The notes below the pieces were generated by a model. It saw only the letters and a program-made list of their open reading frames with translations. It was not told where the DNA came from and made no database searches. DNA of 64,000 nt from Penicillus capitatus (lineage: Eukaryota; Plantae; Chlorophyta). Position 1 is the first letter of the stretch. Every line of letters begins with the position of its first letter. The position numbers and the translations under genes are program-made. The stretch spans positions 2,492,902 through 2,556,901 of the forward strand of contig OZ287694.1 of NCBI GenBank assembly GCA_965649825.1, given 5' to 3'. Positions 3,014 to 56,797 of this stretch are shown here, in pieces.

Positions 3014-3511
3014 AACGACGCAAACGAACGCTCGAACGATAGCACAGGAACTCGAGATTATTTACAACAGGAATGTCAACCTTAAGGACCCACGGTGGTT
3101 GTGCGTTTCCTAACCATACTATCTGACAGTCGAGAACTTCAGTGCTTGTTCGACAACCATCGCCCTATTGTTATGAGGAAGTTGGCTCGGAGGCTAGCAC
3201 CCGTCGCAGCTGATGGTCTGCGCGCCTAGGTGGTTACCATGACAGCGAACCACTTCCGACGGCCACGAACGACGGACGGGACGCTACATATCCAACAGTA
3301 ACCACCTAGGCGCGCTGACCATTGGTCGCGACGGGTGTCGGCCTTTGACCTGCCTTTCCAATAACGGTTGGACGATGGTTGCCGAGTGTGGGCTGAAGTT
3401 CCCAGCCGTTAGACGTAAGGTCAGGGAACCCACAACCATCCTAAGTATTTAATGGCGACAATTGCTGTAAGATAATCTCGAGTTCCTAGTGCTAAATCTG
3501 AGTGCGTCGTT
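3014..3511. repeat. Long imperfect inverted repeat / fold-back with a ~60-nt loop
   Basis: Nested reverse-complement matches: 3014-3022/3503-3511; ~3041-3070/~3465-3493; ~3094-3163/~3372-3441; 3198-3207/3328-3337; perfect 18 bp at 3220-3237/3298-3315. Confidence 0.85.
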
Positions 3512-3552
3512 ATCATCATCTTCGTTTCCCGTCTCGAAATGATGCTCTTCAG

Positions 3553-3875
3553 ACTCTCGACCAGTTTCTACAGGACGGCCGGTAGGGTTGATTCGGAGGT
3601 CTGTTCTGTGACAGGCAGCGTCTGCTGCACAATCTGGATAAACTTCTGCACTTCGTCATTGACGAGATCGAATCCAAACTGGTAAGCCAGAAGCTTTGGA
3701 AATGAAGTCCAAGTAAGAAAAGAGTTAGATGATATAATCTGAATGCAGTAGACGACGACATTGGTGGAAAAAGTTAGGGACACATCTGTTGGTTCTCAGA
3801 ACTGAGAGTCTGATGGTAGATCTCGACCCAGAAGAGAACCAGAAGCGTGTGCGCTATAAGGAAAAGCAGACCTAA
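3553..3875 (+). pseudogene. Orphan exon-like coding fragments of unknown identity
   Basis: GT-AG-bounded pieces translate to TLDQFLQDGRQRLLHNLDKLLHFVIDEIESKL and LLVLRTESLMVDLDPEENQKRVRYKEKQT*. I could not join them into an intact model. Confidence 0.25.
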
Positions 3876-3878
3876 GAA

Positions 3879-3901
3879 TCACCACCACCACCACCACCAC
3901 C
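3879..3901. repeat. (CAC/ACC)n microsatellite
   Basis: Direct read: tcaccaccaccaccaccaccacc. Confidence 0.85.
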
Positions 3902-4416
3902 TATCAAAGAGAAAAGTGTGAGAAAAAGTAAACGACGGCGTTAGGTAGATAGGAAATGAAGAGTTGCACTGTACAGGACCCGATGGCCCGTCAAATCGTC
4001 CATGTAAGAATACAGCCCAAACAAAAAGACACCTGGAACACACTTTCTGGGTCGTCCAACCGTCATCTGGAACACGCAATTCAATACGCGTCAGTAATCT
4101 GCATGGCCACGGGGCTCCATGATCATCATGGAAGCCGCCTTGCCCTTAAGCGATGCCGATTATGGCACAGACAGCAAGTGCAGAGGTAACACCAGTAACA
4201 CGTGTACCTGTCATCGCAGCCGTTATGTAGGACGTCGCGTCGGACCGCATACGTAGGAATGGGGAAGGGAAGGGAAGCGAGAATGTTCCAGTCGGGTATG
4301 TGCAGCATGAAGCGACGCAGGGCCATAGGGAGTGACGCCTGCACGTAAGCGCAAATAGATCCACGACGCGAGAAAAGAAAACGTTCGTGGTCGCGGTCAT
4401 TTTTCACCGTATGACG

Positions 4417-4620
4417 GTACCGACGGTGTAGCCATGTTGGACGTCCAGTTGCCATCCTTCAACCCACCCAAGGTGCTCTCCATGTCTACAAGCGAGGCCG
4501 GACACCGAGGCTTCCCTTACGGTGCGGTGGGTGTACTCACCTTGTTCCGGCAGCGACGCCGCGTTTGACGGCACGGTCCTCCTCATCGTAGGCATCCCAA
4601 AACGCATCGACGGCATCCAT
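4417..4620 (-). pseudogene. LTO1: Truncated 5' fragment of LTO1
   Basis: MDAVDAFWDAYDEEDRAVKRGVAAGT/HGEHLGWVEGWQLDVQHGYTV matches the intact copy at 15938 except G>D and R>Q. It ends at the breakpoint. Confidence 0.8.
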
Positions 4621-4964
4621 CTCAATCCGTTTAATGACGTTCCATTTCTGGCGCGTCGTCTTAGTTGGCTCCACTGCTTGGCGCTAAGCAACGCGGCCGG
4701 TCTCCGATGAAGAACGTCGACTGGGAGAAAGTGCGTTGCCTTCCCTGAGTTGACACGCACTCTGCTGACTCGGATCTCTGCTTCGGCGCAGAAACGGACA
4801 ACGGCGATGCACACGATTCGCCGAGACTCTCAAGGTGGGTGCCCTCTTTCGCGTGTCGAGGCCTTGACGAGATGTGGATCGTGGTCCAGGATTCGAGATC
4901 GTTCGTGACGACGAGTCGGGATTCGTCTTCCGTAGGAAGCGTCAGAAAGTGCCGAGCGTCCGGA
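4417..4964. repeat. Copy A of a ~550-bp inverted duplication (LTO1 5' fragment, divergent promoter, DSN1 5' end)
   Basis: Reverse complement of 15592-16141, with about 10 substitutions and one 2-nt indel by manual alignment. Confidence 0.95.
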
Positions 4965-5853
4965 AGGGCACCGTCTCGTTGCCGCCGAAGAACCATTCCC
5001 TCCTGCACTCTGCTCTGGCGAAATCGCTGACCGATGCCATTTCAGCTGCGCTTCAACGACATATCGACAAGACGCTGCTTGAGATGAGAGACAGCAGTCA
5101 AGAGGCGGTCATGCAGAAGCTACTCGACAGATTTGCGTCCAAAATACGCACACCAGATTTTATCCTCCGTTTGGCAAGGATCGTCGATGCCGATGTCCCT
5201 GAGATGAAAGGCATACCCACATCCGTTTCTCCATACCGAGGAACATCTCCTGTGCAGAGGAGGATCCCGTGAAGATACTGCAGGAGGTCTGTCCTCCTGG
5301 AGTGGCCGCCTTTGTCGAAGCGGAGCAGCGAAAGGAATCCGATCTCGAATCGACGTTGGTCAGACTGGCACCGAGAGCATTGCCCGTCTCGAATCCTCTC
5401 GAAGCGCTGCAGAAAGAGATTCGTGCACTTGTGGTTGAAGAGCAGCAATGGAAGGATATTCAGGAAAGCCGTCTCTTTGATGATATGCCATTGGAATGTG
5501 ATGATCGCGAAAAAGCGCCGACGTCGTTGATGAACGAATCTGATCACCTCAAGATCGTGGAGGACAAAGAGAGACTCCTGATTCAGGTCAGCTATCCTCA
5601 AGCACTCCTTGAGCGTTTCAGACGTGTGATGCTCCCTGCTGTCAGTCCATGGAGCTTCGGCAATGGATCACCGTGGCCGAGGAGACGACGGAGACAGCGG
5701 AGCGTCTTTTCAGAGATCTCCAAGTAGGCAGCTCCAGACACACACTCTATTCCTTTCTCTTTTCCTGCAGGCAATGTACAATCAGCACGAAATGGCGAAT
5801 GTGATCGTATCGAACGATCCTCGCATCCTCTTCAAGAATCTCCTGTCCCTCTA
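4807..5853 (+). CDS. DSN1: Probable kinetochore MIS12-complex subunit DSN1 (4 introns, one GC-AG)
   Basis: N-terminal FEIVRDDESGFVFRRKR, central LPVSNPLEALQKEIRALVVEEQQWKDI and C-terminal NDPRILFKNL resemble Dsn1/Mis13 motifs as I recall them. Confidence 0.6.
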
Positions 5854-5951
5854 AACAGGCCATCCTCTCAGTGACCGTCGGCGACGAACAGCAGAAGCTC
5901 ATGGCAACTTGGACAAAGACATTACAGAGAGATGACGATCGCTTTGTCCTT

Positions 5952-6374
5952 CTACTTTAATGGCTGCATCAAGGTGATGGTGTCTCCCTTTATCAGAATG
6001 CGACCTGGCACACATACTCGACGCCGAATGTCGGCAAAAGGAGCTCGATATACCCAAAGGCTTCCGGGTCTTCTTCTTCACGTAGATCTCTTGGGCATCA
6101 TCGAGCACCAAGTTCATATACTCGTCAAATCCCTTCAGACCAGACACGTCACATCAGATCCCCCTGTGACAGATGTTCCGCGTTCGTACAATGATGGTGC
6201 CTTCAATCTTCATGTCCTTCTGCTCGAATATCCAAATCTGAATCCGCTGCCGGTTCTGAAGAAACCGGAAGATCAGGTTCTGGAGAAGGGTTCCAACAGG
6301 TCAGGAATGAAAGGCATCTGCCATGAGATGTGTACGATGGGCTGGGTCATTATACGGTGGGCGCGTCCCGACAT
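5952..6374 (-). CDS. SNRPE: snRNP core protein SmE
   Basis: Spliced: [86 protein letters not shown]. Confidence 0.97.
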
Positions 6375-6616
6375 CTTGAAGGTGTGGATACCGCAGACGA
6401 CGTCGACTCGAAGAGGGGAAGAAGAAGAGAGACTCCAGAAACGAAGAGCCGGTGCGCGTCCCGTTCAATGCGGCATTCGGATTTCGTCGTCGACGACGTT
6501 CGCCGTCATCGATCGGGTCCACCACATTCTGGCCGCCGCCCTCTTCGCACCATTGGCTCCTCTTTTCGTCTCAGATTTTCGTTTGGGCATACAGCAGTCG
6601 AGCAAAGTCTTTGACA

Positions 6617-9241
6617 ATGTCGCGTGTCTTCTGCCTGTGCCGCTTTGGCAGACGGCTGACGAGGCTAAGAAGCTTTAGCCGTTCGATGACTGTCCCCGCC
6701 TATTACAGACTGGCACGGCGCTTCAGGTAGAGACACTCTCTTCTACCTTCTCTACGAGTCCTGAGATCTGGATCGCGATCCTGTTGACTGACGCCTTGCC
6801 ACATGTGTTATCGTGACAGTTCAAGTGTTTCCCCTCAAATGAGGGCCTCGTGTCTGAGGTCTTTTCATCCACATACGACCCCTATGACAACGCGTTTCCT
6901 AAGAGGCCTGTCTTCTTGTGCGATGCGACATCTTTACTTGAAGAGATCGACTTGTCCGATTTCTTTCAGTGCCGACGGATGGGACAGAGTTGGAAATGCC
7001 CGCTCTCTCGCCGACAATGGAAAAGGTCACACTTTCGAGGTGTGATGTGACCCTTGTTCACAGAAGGATGAAATGGGATAGGGAGGAATTGCATCGTGGC
7101 TGAAGAAGGAAGGCGACAAAGTCTCTCCAGGGGATGCCATCGCCGAGATCGAAACAGACAAAGCGACTCTGGAATGGGAACTGACAGACGGAGGGTAGAC
7201 ACCCCATGTCAAAGGCCAACACGTGTGTGGAGCTCAGTCTTATATGGCAGATACATTGCGAAGATCCTTTATCGGGCCGGGGAAAAAGACATCCCTGTCG
7301 GAACCTGTGTGGCGATTCTGGTAGACGAGGAGAAAGATGTGGCAGCCTACAAGGACTACACACACGATCCCGGCGCATCAGGTCCACTCCAAATATGTCA
7401 TAGAGGCGGTGGATGTGCTTACGGTGGAATGTTGTTGTTCAGTTGCCGCATCTGCCACGCCTGCTGCATCCGTTGCATCTGCTGCACAGCAAGCTCCTTC
7501 TACAGAGGCCACTCCTGTTACTCAGGCATCGCCTCTCAAAGACTATCCAGCCCATACAGTGGTGGATTTCCCGGCCCTGTCACCTACGATGGAGCGGGGC
7601 AGTATCGGCACCTGGGTGAAAAAAGCAGGCGATTATGTTTCATCCGGTACTCTCTCTGCTGTATGAAGGCGTACAATGTGCTCCGCTTGCGCAGGAGAGA
7701 CCATCTGCACCATCGTGACGGACAAGGCGACGAACGATTTTGAATGTCTAGATGAAGGATACATCGCAAAGATCCTTGTGCCGGATGGCGCGGAGGATCT
7801 CGTCGTGGGCGACCCAATCGCCATCTTAGTTGATGAAAAAGTGATCTTCTCCTTGCCATAACCATCTGTCTCTCAATCCTTACTCTCGCTGTTCCTATCA
7901 GGACTCTGTGGTAGACTTCCAAGACTTCACCGCAGCGGATGCTGCCAAAAAGCCAGCTGAAGCCGTCAAAGCAGAAGTTGCCGCTCCACCAGGTCAGCTG
8001 CTGAACAGTCAGTTGATGAGACTTACACACCTTCTTTGTTCAGCGGCTGCTCAGTCGTCACAGCCACCTGCACCGACGCCCGTTGCAACTTTAGCGCCGC
8101 CGATGGCGACAACGCCTTCATCCTCTGATGGCGACCGAGTCGCAGCGAGTCCTTTTGCCAAGAAGCTGGCAACAGAGGCCAACATCCAGCTGGTAGATCC
8201 ATAGAGCGACTGGCCAGATCAAGATGGCCTTGTGAACAATAGGAGGGCGTCACTGGATCTGGACCGGGAGGTCGCATCATTGCCGCAGATATTCACAATC
8301 TCATGAACCGTGGTGTGGCGGTCACACCTTCAAAACTAATCGAGCAAGCAGAAGGACCATACATCGATCTGCCTTTGTCGCAGATTCGACGAGTCGTTGC
8401 TGAGAGGCTAACAGAATCCAAGCAGACCATACCGCACTATTACTTGACAGTCGACTGCTATGTGGATGAACTCATCGGCCTCAGAAAGAAACTCAATGCC
8501 AAGCTCGAGAAGGAAGGCACAGGTGTCAAACTCTCCATCAACGATTTCATCATCAAGGCAGCAGCACTGGCAAGAGAAACACATCCTTATACACAGAGAC
8601 AGAGAATCTGTATTCGACAGGCTTTGAAGCGTGTGCCCGAAGTTAACAGTTCGTGGCAAGGGGACTTCATCCGGCAATACAATGCTGCTCATGTCACGGT
8701 GGCCGTGCAAACCGATGCGGGTCTCATGGTCCCAGTCGTGAAGAATGCCGATGTCATCGGCTTGCAGTCGATCTCCACCGAAGTGAAGTCGCTAGCAGAA
8801 AAGGTACTGAATGATCATAAGAAACCAACTGCAGACCCACCACCAACCATCCTAACCGGCATGAGCACTTTATGTTTTAGGCCAAGAATGGAAAACTGAG
8901 GCCCGAGGATTACACGGGTGGTACATTTACCATCTCGAATTTGGGAATGTTCGGCATCAAGCAGTTCTGTGCTATTGTGAATCCACCCCAGGCAGCAATC
9001 CTTGCCGTGGGCGGAACACAGCCACGGCTCATCAGAGATGCCACCGAGGGCGAAATTCAGCAAAAGTACATCCATTTATCTTTGCGTAAGAAGGAAGCCA
9101 TGTCCATGGAATCTGTAATGTAGGACAGTTATGAGCTGCACGCTTTCGTGTGATCATCGAGTGGTGGATGGAGCTGTCGGTGCCACGTGGATGAAAGCAT
9201 TCAGGAATTACTTGGAACAGCCACTAATGATGCTGCTCTAA
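6617..9241 (+). CDS. DLAT: Mitochondrial pyruvate dehydrogenase E2 with two lipoyl domains
   Basis: Arg-rich presequence; [16 protein letters not shown] and [16 protein letters not shown] lipoyl domains; [11 protein letters not shown] and [10 protein letters not shown]3-binding domain; [13 protein letters not shown] and DHRVVDGA catalytic motifs. Confidence 0.95.
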
Positions 9242-10246
9242 CCCTTCCTCCATCCCTCTTTCCCTCCATCCTGCATGAGATCTCCGTATTCACGAACATG
9301 GGACGATCAATATATCTCTACATTAACATCGCATCATCCCACTTTCCAACCTTCTTTTCTTCCAATAGCGACAGCAACCGAGCCAGCCAACCAACCAGCC
9401 ATTCGATCCGCTTGAGAAAAGAATGGATCTGCATCCATTTCGTAGGAGAGAGTGAGTGAGTGCATTCATCAAAGTTTCGCTTTAGAGTTCAGAATCCAAT
9501 CTACGTTTACACGCATTTGCCAACCGATACCACGAGGCAGAACAGGTGTGATCTCTTGGCAGCAGCCCCTTGAAACAAGGCTAGTCAAAGCACGCATTAA
9601 CAAAGGAACTGAGGAGAGTTACAAACACATGCAAATCCTTTGCCGGATGAGAAACCGCTTCGTTGTCCAAGAGAAGTCATGTTCATCATCCTGCATCTTG
9701 GTCTAGATACTGCCTTTCTCTGCCAAGCCAACAACCAATGAAACCCATGTCCTTCCAAGTACAGAAAGCACCATGCGTAACTTTGGTTTCCGTTTTTTAT
9801 TTTAAAGAGCAAAATGCCGTATGGACTTGGCAAAGCCACGAACAAACAGAACCCCAACACCATATAACTTGATGATGATGATCAGTGATTTTGTTTATTC
9901 GATGGCTTTGGTCAGACAGAAACGGTATGACTAGCAACAGTGTTCCAGAGACACACATGCACAAAGATCGTCGTCATAGGGATTTGGAATGAGCCTTGTG
10001 TTTATGTCGTCTGCATGCAGAATCATTCTGGCTCCAATACTCAAAGATGAACGAACGAACGAACGAACGTCTGTATTACAAAAATGAGAGACAGAAGCTT
10101 TCCCATCCAGTCGTTGATCGAATCGCCAGTCCAAATCCGATTCAACCCAACCAACCAGCCAACCCAGTCCAATCCGATCCATACTGAATGAAGCAAACAA
10201 GAACTACCCCGAGTGTGCATGCATGCAAAGTCACACTGCTCTCCAT

Positions 10247-12187
10247 TCATTGAGCTTTCTGGGAAGCAGCGCCTTCCAACAAAGCCCAGTTCTTTGATCT
10301 CTCACTCAGTTCGGTTTTCTGCCTTTCTTCTTCTTGGAGGTACAGATCGTAGTACTACACACCACAGGGAGTGTCATCATCATCGTCATCACCCGTAGAG
10401 GATGTCTCTCTCATGCCGTCGGTATGCATGGACGAGATGGGACGTACGTACCCTTTCGTACAGATCCTTGTCCATTTCTTGGATGAACTTTCGGACACTG
10501 ATCGTGAGCGTGTGAACGGATGGATTCCAATGTCTGTTGGCATTCTCTTCCAAAGCAGGAACCAGTATTGGAACCAGATCCACTCGGAACTGACTCAGTA
10601 ATCCCATGACACATTCATTGTTCATAAACAGCAACAAAGAACGTTCTGCCACCTGTCTCCAACAACACAGAGCGATCAGATCCCACTCCATCATAGCATG
10701 CATGACACGCAATGAATGATCATTTGGGAGACGGACGCACTTGGAAATGGGAGCTGTTTATGCACTTGGCTAATTGGCGAAAGAGCGGTTTCATCACTTT
10801 CTGAAATTCGCCTAACTGTGTCAACTCCAAGATGTCTTCCAGTTCTTCTAAGAATAAAACCTCCTTTGGACTGTTGGTCACTGGCCAATATTTCAACAAA
10901 GATCTCAGCACCGGATCAGCCAGAGTATAATCCTTTTCAACGAACTGGAAAGGCAAATCCATGCAATCAATATCAGACCGATCATCGCACACACGGATCG
11001 ACAGGCCAACGCACTTGAGTCACGCAGTATGATAGATGTGAGTGGTACATGGACAGACACTTTGGCTTATGCAATGGCATCAGTGCTTTCTGCAAGAATA
11101 TCTGCAAACAAGGACAACAGGATGCAGCTGTTAGTGATGCTGTGTCGCTGCACCTTGTGCTCTTCTTTCAGCGGCAAAGCGAATCCATTAATGATGCTCC
11201 CTAGAATCTCCAGCAACTCTGCAATTCCTGAGTGTCTCTCCGTTTCGAAGATAAATCGGTAGAACACATTGTTTATCGCTTTCCGTATGAACGACCTGTC
11301 ATTCGCAGGAGATCGATCTTCGATCTCTGTTGTCCCATTCAACGAGGCGAGATCACCTGTGCACCATGAACTTTCCATAGATCCTGTGAAGAATGGTCTT
11401 GAGGTAATCTCTCTCTCTTGGATCCTCAGAATCAAACAGCTCCAGGAGCTTCAGGATGAAGGAATGATCTATGTATTTCTTTGCTTGGCGCGCCTCGGTG
11501 TCGGCCGACACAACATATCTCAACAAGAACTCATAAACCAGCTGCCAATCACACATCGCTGTCGTCATCGAAAGAGGAAGAGCGGGAAGGATAGGGTATC
11601 ATCTTTACCTGCAGATGTGGCCAGGCTGGCTCGAGTGTGGGTTCCTCTTCCTCCGGGTCGAATGCTTCATCGTTGTGATTTCGTGAAGGCGGTAACGTTC
11701 TGAACAGATTGTTGCTCAACATGAAGATCACATCTTCGGAAACGGCCTCTGTGAACTTTCCCGGTCCTCCATTCACATAATCCACGAGTTCCAGTAAAGT
11801 GGTCCTCTTCATTTCTTTCTCGACCAGTTCTTTGGAAGGGTCGGAAAAATCGAACAGAAATGCACATTGGTGCAGTTTCTTGACAAACAGATTCTGTTTG
11901 GCCGTGTTTGGCACATCTCTGAAGGCTGGAAGCTTCTCGGCATACATAGCCTTTTTCGATGATTCGTTTAGAGCAGGTAGCGGTGGTTTTTCTCTGGGCA
12001 CTGACGCCGCCGCTGACCTTGGATTTCCTTGCTGATTCGCCTGTTGGCCACTCGTGCCAGTAGTCGTGCCCTTAACCTTTATGGTACCCTCTGCGAGAGG
12101 TCGACCGTTAGAACTTCCTTGAGTGGAGGACTCAGGCGAAGAAGAACGTTCGACTGGACGTCTAACGGCATTAATGCGTTTCCACAT
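10247..12187 (-). CDS. PPP2R5: PP2A regulatory subunit B' (B56)
   Basis: [73 protein letters not shown]. Confidence 0.96.
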
Positions 12188-12501
12188 GTCCACGAACAGA
12201 GGCGCAAAGATATGATAGCTATGCTGCTTGATAACACTCACTCTCCACGCGACGGCAGAGAACAGGCCGAGCCACAGGTAAGCAAAAAGTTATCCCGTTT
12301 ACACCGAACACAACTAACGGTGCGTCGCGATGAAAGAAATCTCGACAAAGGCAATAGTGGAGGCGCTCGACGGAGCGATACGGACAATGGAAACGAGAAA
12401 GTGCCGTATCTCCGTGTACGACGGTAGAGAAACGGTCTCTCCTTTCAAGACAAGAAACGTCCCATCAATGTTTTTCATGTGTGTATGCATGCATGCATGC
12501 A

Positions 12502-15472
12502 TCACATCATCTTATTGCCGGGTCTCTTCCAGTCACCACTCTTGTGCAGCAATGTCGCACAGAGGACAGACAGATCGGTGACAATGAGAAAGGCGAGTTC
12601 GAAAACGAATTTGGGAGCAAAGGTTCGATAGGTCCACAGATGACGTCTCATGATGTTGGCACTTGTCATAGAGAGAAAGAGAAGATAGCTACGAGCAGTC
12701 AGATAGGCAGAAAGGACATGCTGCGATGGCGCATAGGGAGGGCACAGACAGGAGAGGAGAAACGGCATGAGAATCCATCCACTAAATGTCTCTAGAGCCA
12801 GGAGCATGCCGGATGTGTAGTACTCAAAGTCAGGGAATCCGATGAAAGCGGCTGTGAAATGAAGGCCGGAGAATTCACAGTAGTGTTCGGTGTGGAAGAA
12901 GACGTGCATAGCTGCGTAATGTCCGACGAGTCCAAATCCGAAGCTCTTCATTTCGGTCGTGTCGGATTCTCTGTTGCTAAAAATGAGGCTGCGAAAGGAG
13001 AGCAGTTCCCAGAGAGTTGCCGTCCACACGAGACACCCGATCTTGCCAGAAACCAGCAGGATGGATGGCAGAAGGTCCATACAGATCAGCAGACATGTCG
13101 TGTCTCGCTGTGGCTGCGAAGTTAAGAGATGCAGAAGCAGATGGACAGTCATGCTGCACAGAGAGATGAGATATACCAACTGTGCGATGGAGTTGGGATC
13201 GACGACTGTCCAATCCACTTTCAGATCTCGCTGCATCCAGTTCCATCCCACCAGAAAGAGATTCGCTGCAAAGAGACAGAAGGACAGTGAATGTCGAATA
13301 CTGCTCTCCGTTTCTAGTGGACTCTGTCTTTTGCCTTGTTGGCGGTACAATCGGTGTAGTGTTGTTCCGAGCAGTGGTAGAAAGATATACCCGGCCACTG
13401 GAATCCATGAACTCTCTTTGTGCGACGAGTGGCTTGTGTTGCTGGAACTGTGTCTGACAGTTCCGACGAATCCCATCACTGTGCTCGAGAGAAAGATGGC
13501 GGAGAGGCAAAGCCAGAGCGAATGTTGGATGGGCATTTGTCGCCTCTTCTGCAGATGATCCCGTGCAAGTAGCAATGCCAAACAGGCCGTGAACATTCCT
13601 ACAGATCCACTGCCATTCACCGCTTGCACGATCATCACAAGGCACAAACGCACCGGCGATGTGACCCTCCTGCTCGATGAAACTGTTCGAGAAATAGGTA
13701 AAGCCATGGAGCAACAAGAGCGTGCCAAGGGTATGAGCTGATCTGGATGCTCTCCTCCACAACCGTCTAGACAGAATCTGCGTGTGAAAACAGAGACGGT
13801 AGTGCCCCACCTGATGTTTTTTGTCTGTACATAGAGTGCCGCAGCGAAGAGGGCAATTCCAAGTAGACTGGAAACGCTATCGAACTGTGTCCAATGCGTT
13901 CGAGCGAAGGCAACAGCAGCATCCAGATACTCCACATACAACCTGCAAGGATGGATCGAAGAGAGATCCGTCACTCTGAATTCCCATCGTACGTCGCGTT
14001 GTCCATCTGTCCGACAGCTCGTGCATAGAGATCGTTGAATTCTCGAACATGTTTCTGAAAGGACCCTTTGGCAGCCTTGGCGTATGCGTTGAAGTAGCGA
14101 TCCACCTGCCAAGCATTGATCTGAAGGAAGGACAGCAGATCACGGGGATCGTCTGCCCGCTGTCTTAGATTCAGGAGTTGGAGAGATGCTTTGCCAACGC
14201 TTCCGTACGGGACAGGAACGTCCAATAGAAAAGCCAGCGTTGGTGCCAGGTCGATCTGTTCCATCTCGTGAATCTGCAGATGCTCGAGACAGCTGGACGA
14301 CAGAGACGTCGTTCTTGCGGACAGCCTTTCATCTCTGAGTCGTGCAACGTCGACAGCCAGCAGCACTGACTCGATTTCTTCCCGACTTCCACTTCCATGT
14401 GTCCCATCCAATGTCATTCCATGATCACCAAACACAAGGAGAAGCGTCTTCTCGTGGCCGAGCTGTGGCTGATCGATGAGTTGGATCAGAAAGTCTGAGA
14501 TCTCGGCGTCCATTTGATCGAGTTTTTCTGCGACTCCTGGACTCTCGATCGTAAACATGTGCCCGGCGTGATCAAGTCCAACGTAATGTCCAGCCGCAAA
14601 ATCCCACAACTCTGATCGGTTCAGCACGAGTGGATAGAATTCCTGTCCACAGAAGCGTCTCAGACACAGATTCCCTGACCCCTTGCAGAACGCAAACCGT
14701 CCGGACAGCGTTGTCGACAGTGTGCAGATCTTCGATGTTGAAGGATTCGTAAGGTATTGAGACGTCCAGCACGTCATGAAAAAGTGCATCCCACGTGTCG
14801 TCCCCAACGAAAACCTAGAAAACGACCCGAGTGCGCCACAGACGGCCGAGATGGGTTTGTCACACAAGTCGCTTTCCGCGTTGCTTTAGCTGTTTCAAGA
14901 GATTGTCTTCCGTGACCTGCTTGCCAGAGAAACTCTCGCTCACATCCATCAATGTCGGAAGACTGCCCTAAAGCGGCAAAACGGTGAACGACGGATGGCC
15001 TGCAGTGGGAAACATGTGTGATTACGGTAAACATTGCTTTGAGCCGTTGCATGGTTCCCGTTGGCGTATCGGCGATGAACTTGAAAATCAACGAAGCTTT
15101 ACTCTACGTGCTCCGTGTGCTTCTCTCATACGTATGCTCACACTTTACCCCATTTGTTTGGAGAAGATCCAGAAGCTTCGGAAATCGGGCGACGTGAAGA
15201 GGGCGCTCTCCTGGTCGTTGACAGTCTTCGTCGACCACCGCATCAAAACGAAGCGCATCGACGACAATGACGACCACACGATCGTAGCTCGATTCCTTCC
15301 AACAAACCGACGACGCGCTTGACCGCGTTACTGGAATCGGGTCCCAACAATGGCTGTGCTGCGGCAACTCGATCCGCGTTAAGAGATAACCTCTGCAGAA
15401 AAGGAAGAGTGCGACGGCATGGAGACAGAGAACGCAACAGGCGACGCCGAGATGACGAAACGGGAATACCAT
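12502..15472 (-). CDS. PIGO: GPI ethanolamine phosphate transferase 3 (PIG-O); may be N-terminally extended (see findings)
   Basis: GYLLTRIEL, VVVIVVDALRFD, ADTPTGTMQRLKA, HYVGLDHAGH, GDHGMTLDGTHG, multi-TM C-terminus ending RRHLWTYRTFAPKFVFE. Confidence 0.93.
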
Positions 15473-15591
15473 TGACGGAAGTCGTGCTGCGTTCTCCTTG
15501 GGAGTCAGACACGTCACCTCCTGATGTGACGTCAATCCACCTGACTTGACTGGTATATTGTCAAACGCAGCGTATCACCTGGTGTGTGTAC

Positions 15592-15751
15592 TCCGGACGC
15601 TCGGCACTTTCTGACGCTTTCTGCGGAAGACGAATCCCGACTCGTCGTCACGAACGATCTCGAATCCTGGACCACGATCCACATCTCGTCGAGGCCTCGA
15701 CACGCGAAAGAGGGCACCCCCACCTTGAGAATCTCGGCGAATCGTGTGCAT
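15592..15751 (-). other. Duplicated DSN1 exons 1-2 (35 codons) directly upstream of PIG-O and spliceable in frame to it
   Basis: Encodes MHTIRRDSQGFEIVRDDESGFVFRRKRQKVPSVR. A GT..AG intron at 15591-15541 (51 nt) follows immediately. Confidence 0.6.
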
Positions 15752-16141
15752 CGCCGTCGTGCGTTTCTGCGCCGAAGCAGAGATCCGAGTCAGCAGAGTG
15801 CGTGTCAACTCAGGGAAGGCAACGCACTTTCTCCCAGTCGACGTTCTTCATCGGAGACCGGCCGCGTTGCTTAGCGCCAAGCAGTGGAGCCAACTAAGAC
15901 GACGTGCCAGAAATGGAACGTCATTAAACGGATTGAGATGGATGCCGTCGATGCGTTTTGGGATGCCTACGATGAGGAGGACCGTGCCGTCAAACGCGGC
16001 GTCGCTGCCGGAACAAGGTGAGTACACCCACCGCACCGTAAGGGAAGCCTCGGTGTCCGGCCTCGCTTGTAGACATGGAGAGCACCTTGGGTGGGTTGAA
16101 GGATGGCAACTGGGTGTCCGACATGGCTACACCGTCGGTAC
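15592..16141. repeat. Copy B of the inverted duplication (DSN1 5' fragment, promoter, LTO1 5' end)
   Basis: Reverse complement of 4417-4964. Confidence 0.95.
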
Positions 16142-16565
16142 TGGCAACTCCGTGAATCTCGCCTCACGCACATAAACACATCTCTTGTCTTTTACTAGGG
16201 GCTGAGATCGGGTTCTATGCCGGTACCTTGCACATGTTGAGAGAGTTCCAACGTGAATGCCCTGAGCAGTTCTCAGAGAAGGTCATAGATCCCACTCACT
16301 TTCTGGAAGAGAGTGAGCTTTGCCTTCGATGTTAGGTGGTCCGTTTGATGGGACGATTGGAATCGTTGATCGAGGCATTCCCACTTAGCAATGAGACAGT
16401 GCGCATAGGATCGTTTCTGTTCGCTGGGTTAAACGAACAGTATCTGTATAGGAGAGGGACTTGGAAGTCGAGAGGAACCGGATGACAGAAGTACACAAAC
16501 AGATCGTCGCAAACATGAACGTTGTTGTCACCGTTGCTTCCCCAACAGAAACCATGGATTTCTAG
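15938..16565 (+). CDS. LTO1: LTO1/ORAOV1 (Yae1-N family, Fe-S maturation adaptor)
   Basis: Spliced: ..GEHLGWVEGWQLGVRHGYTVGAEIGFYAGTL..LESLIEAFPLSNE..TMDF*, with the Gly-repeat pattern of the Lto1/Yae1 family. Confidence 0.85.
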
Positions 16566-16769
16566 TGTCGGCTTAAGCGGCATTTCACCTCTTCAAAAAC
16601 AAGAATGACTGTCTGTGAAAAGAAAGAGACTCTGGCATCGATTCCATCGACATGCGGATTGTCTCAAAAACAAAACTCCATGAATCAATCGTTTGGCTGG
16701 CTAAGTACAGAGAATCTTCATATGAAATGAACCATCTCTCGTCGATGTCGGCATTTGAATGGGATGCAC

Positions 16770-18275
<1,506 letters not shown>

Positions 18276-18440
18276 GCGATGGCAGAAGAGTGAGAGATGC
18301 ACTGTGCCATCATACACCGAGGGTGGTTTGAAGCGAGAAGTGCGTCTGTCTGTCTGGCCAAAGAGAACGTCGACGCAATCGTGCGACGAATTCGGATCAA
18401 ACGATGTATGCCCTAACCCAACATGCCGTCACATCACGAT

Positions 18441-19727
18441 TCATGTTTTTGCATATTTGGTCATGATCTGCTTTCGGAAACTCCTTAGATCCATGAGAAA
18501 GTCTCGAACGAAATGCGGACACAGACTGAGAATATTGTAAATGGGATCATCCTCATAGTAGATGTCCCTGGGATACTTGCGAATCAATACCCTCTGGATC
18601 ACCTTGGCGATGCGAACTGGAGGAGATGCTGAATCGTACAGATCTGAGAAAAATCGCTCGTAGGCTGTGAGAAACATTCGACCACCAAATCTCTGCATCA
18701 CATCGGATGGGCCATGCGAGAGCAATCGTGCAGCAGAGACCGGAATCTGACTGAGCGATCCTGTTCGGACAGGACCGGGTACAATTCGAATGACCTAGAC
18801 ACGAAGGCGCACATCAGAGTAAGCATCACTGTGCGGAGGGTATCGCACTTGGATGCCGAGTTCGATGAGTTCTTGCCTGAGGCCATCTGTGAAGGCAGCC
18901 ATGGCAGACTTGGATGCACAATAGGCTGTGTTGCCGGGTGAGCAGAGGAGTTCTGCCACACTGCTGATGTTGATGATCCTTCCGCCGTTGTATTTCTCGG
19001 CATCACCATGCATCAGCAATGGCAAAAATGCTTTGGTCACACGAATCACACCGAAAAAATTCACTTGCATCACACGAGTATAGACATCGATAGGCGTGAC
19101 TTCGACGAAAGATCCATCAAAGGCACCCGCATTGTTGATGATGGCGTAGAGCTTTCGATCAGCCAATCGTGATCGGACAACGTTGACGAAATCGCAGACA
19201 TCTGTGTCGGATGTGACATCTGCTTTCATAGAAATGAGATTGGATCTCTGTAGAGAATTCAGTTTCTGGACACCCCCCGCTGTAAGACATCCAGCAAAAA
19301 CGAGCACATCGGGAAACGCAGCAGAGATTATTGCCGCCGTTTCCACACCAATCCCCGAATCACACCCAGTGATAACAATCCCACAATTAGAAATCTCAGA
19401 GTCAAGTTTATCGAACGGTCTGCTCGATCGGAACAGGCGCCACAGATGGGCACAGATCAGAGGAGTCGACACCAAAAAGACAGAAGCACCCATAAGCGAG
19501 AAGAAGGATTTCATGAATCCCAGATAACGGTTGTCTGTGATGTTGGACAACGGCGACGATGGGGGTGTCTGTTTGCCGAGGACGCGAATCTCCATCTTCG
19601 ACGCTCCTCCTTTCTCTGAGAGCTTCTCGTTCACTCGGGGAAACATTTTGGAAAATGTATTCTGCAGAAACCCGATGGTGTCTCTGATGTAGAGCTTGGA
19701 CAGCCAATCATCGTCTTTGTCCGCCAT
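18441..19727 (-). CDS. Short-chain dehydrogenase/reductase (SDR9C / RDH-BDH1-like)
   Basis: VITGCDSGIG, NNAG, VNFFG, NISS, YCASK catalytic motif; N-terminal hydrophobic anchor. Confidence 0.9.
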
Positions 19728-19801
19728 TCTCGAAACGGCCTGCAACAAATCACCTTCGGATGATGATCAAATGATGATCCCATGATGCACAACGCCAGCT
19801 G

Positions 19802-20742
19802 ATGTCGGGTCAATCTGCTCTCCTAACCGAGCGATGGCTGCCCGGGAGGGCACGACCACATCTGAGCGAGACATGTATGCATCCTATGCACAAGGCGAAG
19901 AGGGGCCGTCTACGTCGACGAAGAACGACCTGTCAGTGTCACGGTCGCGAGATGTCGGTGAAGAGACTTGCTGTGTTTGTGTCTGGAACGGGATCGAATT
20001 TTCGAAAGATCCACGAATCCTGCAGGATGAAGAAGATCCAAGGAGATATCGTGCTATTGGTGACAAACAATCCAGACTGTCCGGCAGCTGTCTATGCCAC
20101 AGACAACGCCATTCCCACACACGTCTATCCATGTAGAGGCGCCGATGCTGCTCGCGATATTGCCTCTCTTGTCGAGACCGTCCGGGATCAGTACCAGACA
20201 GATCTGGTTATTCTTGCGGGTTACCTGAAGAAGATCCCTGCGGAGCTCATCCAGGAAAGCCTGCCTGTCGTCGTGAAATGTGATCTAATGATGATGTGAC
20301 TGACGTTCAGATGTATCCCAGGGCAATGCTGAACATTCATCCGGCACTGCTGCCTGCCTTTGGAGGCAAGGGGTTCTATGGAATGAAGGTGCATGAAGCT
20401 GTCCTTGCCTCCGGTGCCAAGTACTCGGGTATCCCTGCACACCTTGATCCTTGCTACCAACGAAACCATTCTCCAGGAGCAACGGTGCATTACGTGAACG
20501 AAGACTACGATCGAGGCGTGATCTTGGATCAGCGAGTGGTTCCTGTGCTGCAGAATGACACGGCAGCATCACTGGCTCAACGTGTTCTGAGACAAGTCTG
20601 CTCAGCCAGTACGAGAGGAAGGGTCATTGATGGTGTCTGTCCATGACAGGAACACGATCTGTACTGCAGTTGCATCTGTGCCTTGTGTGATGGCCGCGTT
20701 GTGTGGAATGATGACAACACGCCGTTTATTCAGAGCCGTTGA
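19802..20742 (+). CDS. purN: Phosphoribosylglycinamide formyltransferase
   Basis: LAVFVSGTGSNF, LAGYLK, LNIHPALLP, GATVHYVNEDYDRG, AQRVLRQEH. Start codon uncertain. Confidence 0.93.
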
Positions 20743-20815
20743 TGTTTGCCGTTGTCCTTTCGGAATTACGCACATCCGCCGCCATTCATCGCGGTCGCGT
20801 ATCAATGCCTCCTTC

Positions 20816-21990
20816 ATGAACCAAAGTGACACCAGAGAGTCGAAGCGCCCGCTGCGCTGGGGCATCATCGGCACCGGCTCTGTCGCGAAGAAATTCACAC
20901 AGGATGTCATACTCCACGCTTCGGCATTCGGCGAAATCGCATCCGTCCTGACACGGAATGTCGCACAGTCCAATAGTTTTCTAGAACAGTTCGGCCTGTC
21001 GAAGAATCGCGCCTTCTCCGATATGGATACATTTGCCGCGAGTGGAATCGATGTCTGCTATGTGGCGACACCGCACACGATGCATGTCGATATGACAATT
21101 CAGTGCCTGGAACGCAATCTCCACGTCTTGGTTGAGAAGCCCTTCTCCCTGACCCCCGAGGGACTGACCCGTGTCTTCGATGTACGACTCGAATTAGGGT
21201 TCAGCAGCAGATTTGAGGTGTGGTGGATGGCTGTGTGATGCAGATTGCTCGACGTAAGAATCGCTTTGTCATGGAGGCCGTGTGGACACGATTCATTCCT
21301 GCCTTCCAAAGAGTGGTCGATATTATTCAGAGTGGTGGAATTGGAGATGTGGTCTCCATTGATGTCGATTTCGGTTTTGATGGAAGTGACAGTCCATCCC
21401 GACTCACGGATCCATCTCTGGCAGGAGGGGCTCTGTACGACATTGGCACCTATGCTCTGCATCTCGGCACCCTCTTCGCGCAGCCTCCTTCCCAGACAGA
21501 TATGCCAGAGATCATCCATACGACATCCAATAGACGAGAGAATGGAGTGGATGAAACATTCACTGCCATTCTAAGATATCCCACCTCCGTATGCCTGCCC
21601 TCTCCATTGAACTGCTGAATGGCGGCGATCGTGCTCTGATTAGGGTCAGCGTCATGTGCCGTTACACATGACACTGTCTATTGTGGAAGCTACGACATGC
21701 GTCGCCTATATCCGAGGCAACAAAGGATACATACTCATCGAGCAACCTTTCCATTCACCAGATTCCTTCATCCACAACGGTATGCATTGCCGCAGAGAGG
21801 TCGTTGCCGAAATGTGTGCGCAGGGAAGAGAGAAGAGATCAAGAGAGAGGGTCATGGAATGCATTATGAGACGAGGGAAGTCCACCGTTGCATTCTGAAC
21901 GGGAAGACGGAATCCGAAATCGTTCCTTGGAATGATAGTCTACGCTGGGCCCAAACATTCAGCAGACTCGCCTATTATGATCAGAAATAA
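20816..21990 (+). CDS. Gfo/Idh/MocA-family oxidoreductase (dihydrodiol dehydrogenase-like)
   Basis: [43 protein letters not shown]. Confidence 0.9.
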
Positions 21991-22061
21991 TTCATTCCGC
22001 GTTATTATCCTCATTAAACACGCATACGTCTGTTTTTCAATACGCCTGTCTGTTCGCGACG

Positions 22062-25026
22062 ATGGCTGCTGCCATTGGTGTTCTGCGACGCCATCGCGTC
22101 TCGCGTCTGCCGACGCTCTTCTTCGCGGGATCCAGTCCGATTCCAAGTCCTCTGATCTCTGCTGCTGTGCCTCTGGTGTGGCAACGGCCATCAGTGGCAC
22201 CTTCGACGCTTCTTTCCGGATCCAGTCTTTTCTCGCGATGGCTCAGTGAATTGTCCATGAAGACGGGAGAGGCGTCGGAAGCGGCAGACGATCTGGAAAG
22301 AGTACGCAATATTGGCATCAGTGCCCACATTGATTCGGGGAAGACCACCCTGACCGAACGCGTCCTCTTTTATACGGGCCGAATTTCGAATATGCACGAA
22401 GTGAGAGCCACCTGCTGTTGGAAGAGTGAGAGAGTGAGAAGTCAATAAACAGGTGCGCGGAAAGGACGGCATCGGCGCCACCATGGACAGCATGGAACTT
22501 GAAAGAGAAAAGGGTATGGAACACATACATTTCTGTTGAAGGTCACATCACTCTCTCACACAATACTTTAGGAATCACGATTCAGTCGGCAGCGACCTTT
22601 TGCAAGTGGAAGGACGTGGATATCAATATTATCGATACGCCAGGGCATGTGGATTTCACGATCGAAGTGGAACGTGCGTTGCGTGTACTGGACGGTGCCA
22701 TCCTCGTCGTCTGCAGGTGCGTCTGCTGTCCAACGGCGTCGATGGACTGAGACGACAGATATGGTGTGTCAGTGTGGGCGGTGTGCAGAGTCAGACGATC
22801 ACGGTTGACCGACAGATGCGTCGTTACAGTGTCCCGCGACTATGTTTCATCAACAAACTTGATCGAGCCGGGGCAAAACCGTGGAGCGTCATCGATCAGA
22901 TGCGATCCAAACTGAAACTTAATTGCGCTGCCGTGCAGTTTCCTATTGGACTGGAAGGCAATCACGAAGGAGTCGTTGATGTGATCCGTCATCGGGCCTT
23001 CTACTTTGACGGCGTGAAAGGTCGCCGGTCACACACTGTCTTTCTCAAAATGGATGGCGGCTGTTGGAACAGGGTCTGCTGTCCGAGAGGATGGAGTGCC
23101 GGATGCCTTACTGGCTGATGTTGAGAAGAAGCGAAACGAATTGATCCATCTGATCGCGGATGTGGATGACGAAGTGGGCGATCTCTTTCTCTCAGAAGAG
23201 GCTATTCCTTCGGATGTGTTGGTGTCTGCTATCCGACGGGCAACTGTCGCTCGGAAATTCGTGCCGGTCTTCATGGGTAGCGCCTTTAAGAACAAAGGTC
23301 ACGCGTGCTCGCCTCATTGAGTGACCGTGGCCGAGTGTTTGTCGTATCCTGCTAGGTGTGCAAGTCTTGTTGGACGGTGTACAAGACTTTCTACCTTCGC
23401 CGAATGAGGTGAAGAACGTGGCATTGGATGTGGATAACGATGAACAGCCCATAGGTCACACTTTGTCGACGATACTGTGACGACTCAGAGTGTGACATGC
23501 ATTAGACTTGGAATGCTCGCCGGATGGTCCCCTTGTGGCACTGGCCTTCAAACTGGAGGAAGGCAGATTCGGACAGCTAACCTATATGCGTCTCTACTCT
23601 GGGTATGACCTCTCCTCGCTGAGGACATCCTTATCGTCTATCTGCAGGACGATGAAGAAAAGCAGTTACATTGTGAACACCACGACCAAGAAAAAGATAA
23701 AGGTGCTCTGATGGATCGCGCTATCATGTGTTCTGGCATGTTTTGTCTTTCCACAGGTGCCCAGAATTGTCAAGCTCCATGCAGATGAACTCTCAGACAT
23801 TCCCGTTGCCAGGGCTGGAGATATTGTGGCGATGTTTGGCGTGGACTGTGCATCTGGCGACACGTTCACAGATGGCAGTGTTCGTTATGCCATGTCTTCT
23901 ATTCGAGTACCGGATCCCGTCATGTCTCTGGCCATTGTGCCTAAATCCAATCAGCAATCAGCTGCCTTCTCCAAGGCCCTACAGCGATTTCAGAAGGAAG
24001 ACCCAACATTCAAAGTCGGGCTCAACACAGAGACAGGAGAGACGATCGTCAGCGGAATGGGGGAACTGCACTTGGATGTCTACATCGAACGCATGCGAAG
24101 AGAATACAAGTATCTCGTGAAAGATCTCAGGAGTCCTTCTCTGGAGGCGGCGGCCATGTTTGTGCATCAAGGGTCGAGTGCGATGTTGGAAAGCCAAAGG
24201 TGAACTTTCGTGAGACGATTTCTGTTCAGGCAGATTTTGACTATCTGCACAAGAAACAGTCTGGAGGTTCAGGACAGTACGGCCGCGTAATTGGGTACAT
24301 TGAAACGCTGCCAGAGGGATCAACAGAGAAGCTGAAATTCACGAACAATATTCTCGGGAATGCCATACCGCCACAGTTCATGCCTGCTGTGGAGAAGGGA
24401 TTCATCGAAGCTGCCAATTCAGGTGGCCTCACAGGACACCCCGTTCAGGTATCATGGCATACCATACAGGTGGGACGTGCCTCTAGCGAGCAGCATAGGG
24501 CGTGCATTTCGTTGTGACGGATGGCGTTGCGCATGCTGTGGACAGTAGTGAGCTCGCTTTCAAGCTTGCAGCCATCAATGCCTTCAGGGAGGCGTTTAAG
24601 AAAGCAAAGCCCGTCATTCTTGAACCCATCATGAGCGTGGAAATCACCATCCCCGTCGAATTCCAAGGTAGCATCGATCTCTGAGACGACGACGCTGATG
24701 ATATGCCGTTGCCTTTAGGTGCGGTTATGGGCGATCTCAATAGACGAAAGGGCATCGTTCAAGACAGCAGACAAGATGGCGACGACGCCATAGTTACCGC
24801 AAAGATACCCCTTAACGAAATGTTTGGTTACTCGACAGCTCTAAGGTCTATGACTCAAGGTGAGGAATTGCCCCATCATCCGCTGACAAAGATCATAGGG
24901 GTGACCATTCCCTCTCTTTGTTCAGGAAAAGGAGAGTATGCTATGGAATACACAGAACATTGCAGAGTGTCTCAAGAAATGCAAAATCAGCTATTGAACG
25001 AATTCAGTCAGAAGCCACAGAAATAA
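22062..25026 (+). CDS. GFM1: Mitochondrial elongation factor G1
   Basis: [65 protein letters not shown]. Confidence 0.97.
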
Positions 25027-56761: not shown

Positions 56762-56797
56762 TGGGCACAACACCTTCCGCTGTGAATACTCCGAAAG

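What the first reader, a model, noticed from the sequence alone, without database searches (positions are those of the whole stretch)
15472..15751. Candidate new chimeric gene: DSN1 N-terminus spliced in frame onto PIG-O
The duplicated DSN1 segment ends exactly at a GT donor (15591). A typical 51-nt intron to AG (15541) joins it in frame to an open PIG-O leader: MHTIRRDSQGFEIVRDDESGFVFRRKRQKVPSVR-SGLTSHQEVTCLTPKENAARLPS-MVFPF.. (seen). All 3 coding differences from DSN1 are synonymous (GAC/GAT, CGT/CGC, AGG/AGA). In contrast, 2 of 3 differences in the LTO1 stump are nonsynonymous, including loss of a conserved Gly. The numbers are small and only suggestive. Inference: PIG-O adopted the duplicated promoter and gained a ~57-aa, probably cytosolic, extension with a basic RRKRQK motif.
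Basis: partly seen in the sequence, partly recalled or inferred. Interest (0 to 1): 0.7.

Follow-up and report, generated by a model that had tools for sequence, protein, structure and literature searches.

The report
Inversion breakpoint upstream of PIG-O
The proposed DSN1/PIG-O fusion site is the edge of a recent ~11-kb inversion that copied a two-way promoter plus gene starts next to the GPI-anchor gene PIG-O; a fusion protein is possible on paper, but the evidence for it is no better than chance.

Summary
The sequence facts are real. A 553-nt inverted duplication exists (4412-4964 and 15592-16146). It ends at 15592. A 51-nt GT-AG excision would join the copied 34 codons in frame to PIG-O.

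Four related genomes change the interpretation. In them the segment is single-copy, sitting as GGPPS - LTO1 <promoter> DSN1-like. PIG-O lies head-to-head with BCD1, with only 29-52 nt between the two ATGs. The window species therefore carries a derived ~11-kb inversion with a breakpoint duplication.
- Copy B holds the intact LTO1, not a stump.
- Copy A holds the intact DSN1-like gene plus the true LTO1 stump.
- PIG-O lost BCD1 and its ancestral upstream DNA.

So taking over the duplicated promoter is plausible. The fusion-protein evidence is weak:
- 58-73% of shuffled junctions also give an in-frame GT-AG path.
- The splice sites rank in the lower third of 24 real introns.
- All three synonymous differences arose in copy A, the working gene, so they say nothing about copy B.
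- PIG-O starts at the same ATG in the sister species, and all relatives have only a short N-terminus.

Most likely PIG-O protein is unchanged and the stump is a 39-codon upstream ORF or leader. No RNA data exist. This is an ordinary kind of event.

The parts
4412..4964 (+). Copy A of the duplicated segment D. It holds the LTO1 stump (- strand, ATG 4620, stop 4406-4404, 53 codons, Gly>Asp and Arg>Gln), the 186-nt two-way promoter, DSN1-like exon 1 (4807-4834), intron 1 (4835-4889) and the first 75 nt of exon 2. Only the DSN1-like side continues into an ancestral flank.
4807..5854 (+). Intact DSN1-like gene (279 aa, helical, conserved N-terminal motif GFVFRRKRQKVP). This is the parent of the stump. 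The DSN1 name is unverified.
15592..16146 (-). Copy B of D. It is identical in two haplotype contigs. Its LTO1 side is continuous with the rest of LTO1, which is the ancestral adjacency. Its DSN1-like side is cut after 103 coding nt.
15938..16565 (+). Intact LTO1/Yae1-family gene. Five exons: 15938-16017, 16073-16137, 16199-16281, 16336-16398, 16452-16565. It encodes 134 aa ending in MDF. It starts inside copy B and runs beyond it.
15592..15751 (-). DSN1-like stump: exon 1 copy (15751-15724), intron 1 copy (15723-15667) and exon 2 fragment (15666-15592). Together these are 34 codons plus 1 nt.
15473..15591 (-). 119-nt junction of unresolved origin, with no significant similarity to the sister species' PIG-O upstream region. 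Without that splice, the stump ORF stops at TGA 15577-15575 (39 codons), 102 nt before the PIG-O ATG.
12502..15472 (-). PIG-O (GPI ethanolamine phosphate transferase 3), 895 aa. Exons: 15472-15149, 15079-15026, 14967-14866, 14814-14698, 14642-13993, 13942-12502. The start ATG at 15472 matches the sister species.
4965..15471 (.). Inverted segment between the two copies: the rest of DSN1-like, an unknown gene, 2-oxoacid dehydrogenase E2, B56 and PIG-O. It is collinear with the relatives but flipped relative to LTO1-GGPPS.
15810..15851 (-). 13-codon upstream ORF (MKNVDWEKVRCLP*) with a 21-nt invariant block in the DSN1-like leader. Also present in copy A at 4707-4748 (+). It is conserved in the sister species.
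16770..18047 (-). Geranylgeranyl/polyprenyl diphosphate synthase (3' part shown). It is tail-to-tail with LTO1, and this neighbourhood is ancestral.

Best explanation
The 15472-15751 stretch is one junction of a recent, derived ~11-kb inversion in an uncultured eukaryote.

ANCESTRAL LAYOUT. The order was BCD1 <> PIG-O ... DSN1-like <promoter> LTO1 - GGPPS.

THE EVENT. One break was staggered across 553 nt. That stretch covers LTO1 exons 1-2, the 186-nt two-way promoter, DSN1-like exon 1, intron 1 and 75 nt of exon 2. Fill-in left an inverted copy at each end of the inverted block. The other break fell within about 120 nt upstream of the PIG-O ATG and separated PIG-O from BCD1.

CONSEQUENCES
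- Copy A keeps the DSN1-like gene whole and carries a decaying LTO1 stump.
- Copy B keeps LTO1 whole and leaves a 34-codon DSN1-like stump aimed at PIG-O.

INFERRED STEPS
- PIG-O lost its native upstream region, and copy B's promoter must be active for LTO1. So PIG-O is most likely now transcribed from, or with the help of, the duplicated promoter.
- Its protein most likely still starts at the conserved ATG 15472. The stump would then act as 5' leader or a 39-codon upstream ORF, passed by reinitiation or leaky scanning, or avoided by a downstream start site.
- The in-frame 51-nt splice is possible but has no support beyond chance.

SHOWN VERSUS INFERRED. Shown: the duplication, its polarity, the inversion, the loss of the BCD1 adjacency, and the intact genes. 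Inferred: promoter use and the translation route.
For: - Duplication and boundaries.
- Sister species L003 (81-86% identical). One alignment runs from the PIG-O ATG (window 15472) to the end of copy A (4412). A second runs from 15592 through copy B into 16147-18047. So D is single-copy there and each window copy keeps one ancestral flank.
- More distant relatives agree. L006 has adh-GGPPS-(LTO1)-DSN1-like-next gene in one line. L004 joins LTO1 exon 3 to D and to the rest of DSN1-like.
- BCD1<>PIG-O is head-to-head in L003, L007, L008 and L009, with 29-52 nt between the ATGs.
- There is no BCD1 homology in the window or in the 10 kb further left.
- LTO1 is complete only with copy B's flank. Yae1_N scores E=1.4e-4 and the match spans the boundary. 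The D-only part scores 0.071 and the copy A stump gives no hit. Exons are conserved with L003.
- The nonsynonymous LTO1 changes are private to window copy A.
- Both junctions are present in a second haplotype contig.
- The PIG-O start is the same as in L003, and the N-terminus is short in all five species.
- In 117 homologues the DALRFD motif sits at a median of residue 81. It sits near residue 70 here.
- Inverted duplications from staggered breaks at inversion breakpoints are documented in Drosophila, in 17 of 29 inversions (PMC1885836).
Against: - The reciprocal junction is not what a simple two-break inversion predicts. DNA left of copy A (window 1-4411 and 10 kb beyond) is not the BCD1 side and has no recognisable genes. 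So there was a further event or a more complex rearrangement.
- No BCD1 more than 70% identical was found for this species.
- No RNA evidence exists for any transcription start or splice.
- A 39-codon upstream ORF, plus the conserved 13-codon one, would hinder PIG-O translation from a promoter-B transcript. That would favour either the fusion or a downstream start site.
- The candidate intron lies within the range of real introns: 4-8 of 24 score lower, and GTAC donors are used elsewhere.
Confidence: 0.6

Rival explanations
1. Transcripts from the copy B promoter splice out 15591-15541. PIG-O is then made as a fusion protein with a 57-aa cytosolic extension (34 aa DSN1-like N-terminus plus 23 aa of former leader) ahead of its signal-anchor helix.
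For: - The ORF is continuous after the 51-nt excision.
- The length fits the tight intron range of 47-69 nt, and the site scores overlap the lower third of real introns.
- PIG-O lost its native upstream DNA, so copy B transcripts probably run into it.
- The fusion would avoid two upstream ORFs.
- An extra 57 aa keeps the catalytic motif within the family range: 22 of 117 homologues have it at or beyond residue 120.
Against: - An in-frame GT-AG path occurs in 58-73% of shuffled junctions. The real sequence has 11 such paths.
- The acceptor pyrimidine tract is below average (0.54 versus a median of 0.69), and the site scores are matched by about a third of all GT or AG dinucleotides.
- The three synonymous differences arose in copy A, so there is no selection signal on copy B.
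- There are no polymorphisms in copy B or the junction to test.
- The leader residues are not conserved with L003.
- No relative has an N-terminal extension.
- No transcript was found.
Confidence: 0.15
2. PIG-O keeps or gained its own start site inside the 119-nt junction or the exon 2 fragment. The DSN1-like stump is an inert relic, or gives only a short unstable transcript. Copy B at most acts as an upstream activating region.
For: - Promoters in this genome are tiny. There are 29-52 nt between the divergent ATGs of BCD1 and PIG-O in relatives, and about 260 nt between the PIG-O stop and the B56 start.
- There is weak, non-significant similarity of 15540-15500 (TGACGTCAC...GGAG...ACGT) to the L003 spacer, p about 0.07.
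- The PIG-O ATG has a strong context, A at -3 and G at +4.
Against: - With only 29-52 nt between the ATGs, the upstream part of the native promoter must have lain in the BCD1 5' region, which is absent here.
- The TGACGTCA motif is not enriched in the window: 3 found versus 1.7 expected.
- A two-way promoter that must fire for LTO1 lies 280 nt upstream with its DSN1-side sequence unchanged.
Confidence: 0.23
3. Assembly artefact: a chimeric or mis-joined metagenome contig creates a false duplicate.
For: The data come from a metagenome assembly at 23-26x coverage.
Against: - Two contigs that differ by 2-5% near copy A share both junctions.
- The copies differ at 10-16 sites.
- Each copy's flanks are collinear with real genes in relatives.
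Confidence: 0.02

Closest known systems
Inversion-associated inverted duplications from staggered breaks (Ranz et al. 2007, PLoS Biol, PMC1885836)
   Same: - An ancestrally single-copy, non-repetitive segment lies in inverted orientation at both ends of an inverted block.
- Each copy keeps one ancestral flank.
- The size (553 nt) is within the reported range of 46 bp to 1.9 kb (median 321 bp).
- One partial gene copy is decaying.
   Different: - This is in an uncultured protist with ~55-nt introns.
- The duplicated piece is a whole two-way promoter with both genes' first exons.
- The outer flank of copy A is not the expected partner (the BCD1 side), so the event is not a clean two-break inversion, or it was followed by another event.
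Promoter replacement or gene alteration at inversion breakpoints (Guillen and Ruiz 2012, BMC Genomics, PMC3355041)
   Same: A breakpoint lies about 120 bp from a start codon. The gene is left to recruit a new promoter from sequence brought in by the rearrangement.
   Different: There the new sequence was a transposon footprint and expression data existed. Here the donor is a duplicated host promoter and no expression data exist.
Chimeric genes formed by partial duplication plus exon capture (for example the Drosophila jingwei or Sdic type; recalled from memory, not tested here)
   Same: A duplicated 5' exon and promoter of one gene sit upstream of another gene in the same orientation, with an in-frame path.
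   Different: Those cases have transcripts, proteins and selection signatures. Here the in-frame path is at chance level and nothing shows that it is used.

Membership tests
Inversion with breakpoint inverted duplication (staggered-break model) | Two copies in inverted orientation bracket the rearranged block. | tested here: met
   Copies at 4412-4964 and 15592-16146, 10.6 kb apart.
Inversion with breakpoint inverted duplication (staggered-break model) | The segment is single-copy in relatives that have the ancestral order. | tested here: met
   There is one D in L003, and L004 and L006 are collinear.
Inversion with breakpoint inverted duplication (staggered-break model) | Each copy retains exactly one ancestral flank, and the block between them is flipped relative to outgroups. 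| tested here: met
   L003 8446-19498 aligns to window 15472-4412. L003 18949-21400 aligns to window 15592-18047.
Inversion with breakpoint inverted duplication (staggered-break model) | The reciprocal junction joins the other copy to the ancestral neighbour of the second breakpoint (the BCD1 side). | tested here: not met
   There is no BCD1 or L003 upstream homology in window 1-4411 or in the 10 kb beyond. A simple two-break event is therefore not sufficient.
Chimeric (fusion) protein-coding gene | A continuous ORF runs across the two parental parts. | tested here: met
   It is in frame after removing 15591-15541.
Chimeric (fusion) protein-coding gene | The join is more than chance and uses splice sites like the genome's own. 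| tested here: not met
   58-73% of shuffled junctions give a path. The sites are matched by 30-38% of all GT or AG dinucleotides and rank below most real introns.
Chimeric (fusion) protein-coding gene | A transcript or peptide spans the junction. | not testable with these tools
   No RNA-derived sequence of this species is held. The protein search and two JGI scans found nothing.
Chimeric (fusion) protein-coding gene | There is purifying selection on the recruited part. | tested here: inconclusive
   The stump has no substitutions private to copy B. The three synonymous differences are on the copy A lineage. The two haplotypes are identical there.
PIG-O / Gpi13 (GPI ethanolamine phosphate transferase 3) | An alkaline-phosphatase-type catalytic domain and full-length similarity to named PIG-O/GPI13 proteins. 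| tested here: met
   PF01663 E=4e-9. The top hit is 39% identical over 91% of the query, and many hits are named PIG-O or GPI13.
DSN1 / MIS13 kinetochore protein | A match to Pfam MIS13 (PF08202) or to solved DSN1 chains. | tested here: not met
   The window protein gives no hit. One homologue fragment scores E=0.031, below threshold. A PDB profile search and a fold search of a low-confidence model (pLDDT 62) gave nothing relevant.
LTO1 / Yae1 family | The Yae1_N glycine-repeat (GX3) domain. | tested here: inconclusive
   PF09811 scores E=1.4e-4 at 21.9 bits, below the 27.5 cut-off. The G-x3-G run is visible. From memory, the C-terminal MDF fits the known targeting tripeptide.

The most novel reading that the evidence does not exclude
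The DSN1-like(1-34)-leader-PIG-O fusion is really made and is the working PIG-O of this species. In that case an inversion would have grafted the most conserved motif of a putative kinetochore protein (GFVFRRKRQKVP) onto the cytosolic end of an ER GPI-anchor enzyme. It would also have swapped the enzyme's promoter in a single step.
Probability: 0.13. Interest if true: 0.5.

Novelty: new member of a known kind. Interest (0 to 1): 0.3.

Why it matters
This is a clean, datable example, from an uncultured microbial eukaryote, of how one rearrangement can hit two compact two-way promoters and still keep the three affected genes in this window working. The staggered-break duplication preserves both LTO1 and the DSN1-like gene, and it hands a ready-made promoter to PIG-O, which had lost its own.

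If the promoter hand-over or the fusion were shown with RNA, it would illustrate promoter capture or gene fusion by inversion outside animals. As it stands it is an ordinary, well-understood class of event, and the fusion-gene claim is not established.

Tried and rejected
- An unsupervised ORF-joining search for introns converged on codon-bias noise and was dropped. It was replaced by 12 and then 24 introns curated by ORF continuity and cross-species GT/AG conservation.
- TGACGTCA as a promoter motif: not enriched.
- Exact look-up of the PIG-O exon 1 ORF: not on record.
- Full-length chimeric query against 5.8 billion proteins: nothing closer than 39%, so no assembled transcript.
- JGI metagenome scans for the spliced junction and for the unspliced leader: both gave 0 hits, so the species is absent there and the result is uninformative.
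- Homology of the 119-nt junction to the L003 upstream or BCD1 5' region: not significant, p 0.07-0.16.
- DSN1 identity by Pfam, PDB profile, AlphaFold and Foldseek: no support.
- Rfam on the whole window: no hits.
I rejected this.
- A simple two-break inversion was rejected as a complete account, because the outer flank of copy A is not the BCD1 side.
Full report
WHAT IS IN THE SEQUENCE

The window is compact eukaryotic DNA, about 50% G+C with introns of 47-69 nt. On the minus strand, PIG-O starts at 15472. It has six exons and encodes 895 aa. It matches Pfam PF01663, and its best database hits are GPI ethanolamine phosphate transferase 3 / GPI13.

A 553-nt segment, called D here, occurs twice in inverted orientation. 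Copy A is at 4412-4964 and copy B at 15592-16146. They differ by 10 substitutions and one 2-nt indel.

D contains these parts:
- the first two exons of an LTO1/Yae1-like gene;
- a 186-nt divergent promoter;

Copy B's homology stops after ...GTCCGGA (15592) and the next bases are GT. Without that splice, the stump ORF ends after 39 codons at TGA 15577-15575. That is 102 nt before the PIG-O ATG.

WHERE THE WINDOW COMES FROM, AND ITS RELATIVES

Exact-protein look-ups place the window in ENA metagenome assembly ERZ25074695.
- Contig ctg339926 (214 kb) is identical to window 1919-10793.
- A second contig, ctg337633 (68 kb), is identical over 15000-23935 and 50203-57829 but 2-5% divergent over 3113-8000.
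- These are two haplotypes or strains, and both carry both junctions.

A sister species is on a 1.36-Mb contig (L003, ERZ26696514), at 81-86% nucleotide identity. More distant relatives are L004/L005, L006, L007, L008 and L009.

THE DECISIVE COMPARISON

L003 aligns to the window in two pieces.
- L003 8446-19498 matches window 15472 down to 4412. This runs from the PIG-O ATG to the outer end of copy A.
- L003 18949-21400 matches window 15592 up to 18047. This runs through copy B into LTO1 and GGPPS.

So in the sister species D is single-copy, with the rest of DSN1-like on one side and the rest of LTO1 plus GGPPS on the other. In the window each copy keeps only one of these flanks, and the 10.6 kb between the copies is flipped.

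Two more distant relatives agree. L006 has adh - GGPPS - (LTO1) - DSN1-like - next gene in one line. L004 joins LTO1 exon 3 (window 16192-16284) to D and to the rest of DSN1-like. The window arrangement is therefore derived.

This is the signature described for Drosophila inversions that arise from staggered breaks followed by fill-in (PMC1885836).

CONSEQUENCES FOR THE GENES

Copy B carries the intact LTO1 (15938-16565, five exons, 134 aa).
- Its exons beyond D are conserved with L003.
- The Yae1_N match (E=1.4e-4, below Pfam's cut-off) spans the D boundary. It weakens to E=0.071 for the D-only part and vanishes for the copy A version.

Copy A carries the intact DSN1-like gene and the true LTO1 stump. 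In the window haplotype that stump has lost a repeat glycine (Gly to Asp) and changed Arg to Gln. These changes are private to that copy.

PIG-O LOST ITS ANCESTRAL UPSTREAM REGION

In L003, L007, L008 and L009, PIG-O is head-to-head with the zinc-finger snoRNP factor BCD1. Only 29-52 nt separate the two ATGs.

In the window, homology to L003 stops at the PIG-O ATG. The 119 nt between it and copy B show no significant similarity to the L003 spacer or to the BCD1 5' coding region, with p between 0.07 and 0.16. No BCD1 sequence is present in the 64-kb window or in the 10 kb to its left.

With so little room between the ATGs, at least the upstream part of the native promoter must have been left behind. 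Copy B's promoter has to be active, because it drives the only intact LTO1. Its DSN1-side sequence is unchanged. Transcription from copy B into PIG-O is therefore likely. This is an inference, not shown.

IS THERE EVIDENCE FOR A FUSION PROTEIN?

1. Chance. The real sequence offers 11 different in-frame GT-AG paths of 30-100 nt. Among shuffled 119-nt junctions, 55-73% offer at least one, and 32-52% offer one with sites at least as good as the candidate.
2. Splice sites. A first matrix from 12 introns ranked the acceptor below all 12. A better set of 24 introns, chosen by ORF continuity and GT/AG conservation with L003, places the donor above 8 of 24, the acceptor above 6 of 24 and the sum above 4 of 24. 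In the window, 30% of all GT and 38% of all AG dinucleotides score as well. The candidate is a possible intron but a weak one, typical only in length.
3. Selection. Using L003 as outgroup, all three synonymous differences (window 4827, 4933, 4936) arose in copy A, the working DSN1-like gene. Copy B still has the ancestral bases. They show constraint on the parent, not on the stump. The stump has no substitution private to copy B. The two haplotypes are identical from 15000 to 23935, so there is no power to test further.
4. Comparative start. L003 begins PIG-O at the same ATG (MVFVF... versus MVFPF...). All five species have only a few residues before the first membrane helix. The leader translation is not conserved. 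The catalytic DALRFD motif sits near residue 70 here, at residue 71 in the closest homologue, and at a median of 81 in 117 homologues. It would sit at about residue 127 in the fusion, which is still within the family range.
5. Transcripts. None could be found.

The fusion is thus unsupported but not excluded.

WHAT REMAINS UNEXPLAINED

A simple two-break inversion predicts BCD1 next to copy A. Instead, the 14 kb there have no recognisable genes. They contain a 460-nt inverted repeat and are the most divergent part between the two haplotypes. A second event, or a three-break rearrangement, is needed.

No BCD1 above 70% identity was found for this species.

The DSN1 label is also unverified. Only one homologue fragment gives a faint MIS13 match (E=0.031). 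The PDB profile search found nothing, and the fold search of a low-confidence model is meaningless. The N-terminal motif GFVFRRKRQKVP is nonetheless the best-conserved part of the protein family.

VERDICT

PIG-O did come to lie behind a duplicated promoter, through an inversion rather than a simple patch duplication. The chimeric-protein claim, however, rests on coincidences that random sequence reproduces about half the time, and on a selection argument that points to the wrong copy.

Most likely PIG-O protein is unchanged and the stump is leader or an upstream ORF. This is a new instance of a known kind of event, of modest interest.

Noticed in passing
window 15851-15810 (-) and 4707-4748 (+); L003 about 19160-19200: A 13-codon upstream ORF (MKNVDWEKVRCLP*; L003 has MKKLDWEKVRCLS*) lies in the DSN1-like 5' leader, with a 21-nt invariant core TGGGAGAAAGTGCGTTGCCTT. 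L004 also matches by tblastx. It could be a conserved peptide uORF or a promoter element. If it is a uORF, it places the start site more than 100 nt upstream of the DSN1-like ATG.
   Followed up: partly
L003 8392-8448; L007, L008, L009 (PIG-O / BCD1 starts): BCD1 (zf-HIT, PF25790) and PIG-O are divergent neighbours with only 29-52 nt between their ATGs in four relatives spanning wide divergence. This is an unusually tight, conserved gene pair, and it is broken only in the window species.
   Followed up: yes
window 1-4411 and L010 1-9898: The 14 kb left of copy A have no Pfam-recognisable genes. They contain a 460-nt inverted repeat (3040-3494) and a (CCA)n run (about 3880). The two haplotype contigs stop aligning at 3113. 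This may be mobile or fast-evolving DNA at the unexplained junction.
   Followed up: partly
protein database: No BCD1 orthologue above 70% identity was found for the window species, although the sister species and several others have one. Either it was not assembled or it was affected by the rearrangement.
   Followed up: partly
window 3113-8000 versus 15000-23935: The two contigs from the same sample differ by 2-5% near copy A but are identical across copy B, LTO1 and GGPPS. At nine sites within D, the other haplotype's copy A keeps the L003 state while window copy A matches copy B. This pattern is compatible with gene conversion between the copies.
   Followed up: partly
window 16551-16565: LTO1 ends in ...ETMDF. 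From memory, this fits the [LIM]-[DES]-[WF] C-terminal tripeptide used to dock on the cytosolic iron-sulfur targeting complex.
   Followed up: no
window 53980-55611: Thirteen tandem 111-nt (37-codon) repeats, 60-74% identical, lie inside a 1208-aa ORF with NACHT and HEAT-type Pfam hits (52203-55829).
   Followed up: no
window 13992-13943: PIG-O intron 5 is better modelled as 50 nt (donor GAC|GTACGA) than as the 32-nt version I first used. GTAC donors recur in this genome, for example in LTO1 intron 2 and at 7647 and 8804.
   Followed up: yes
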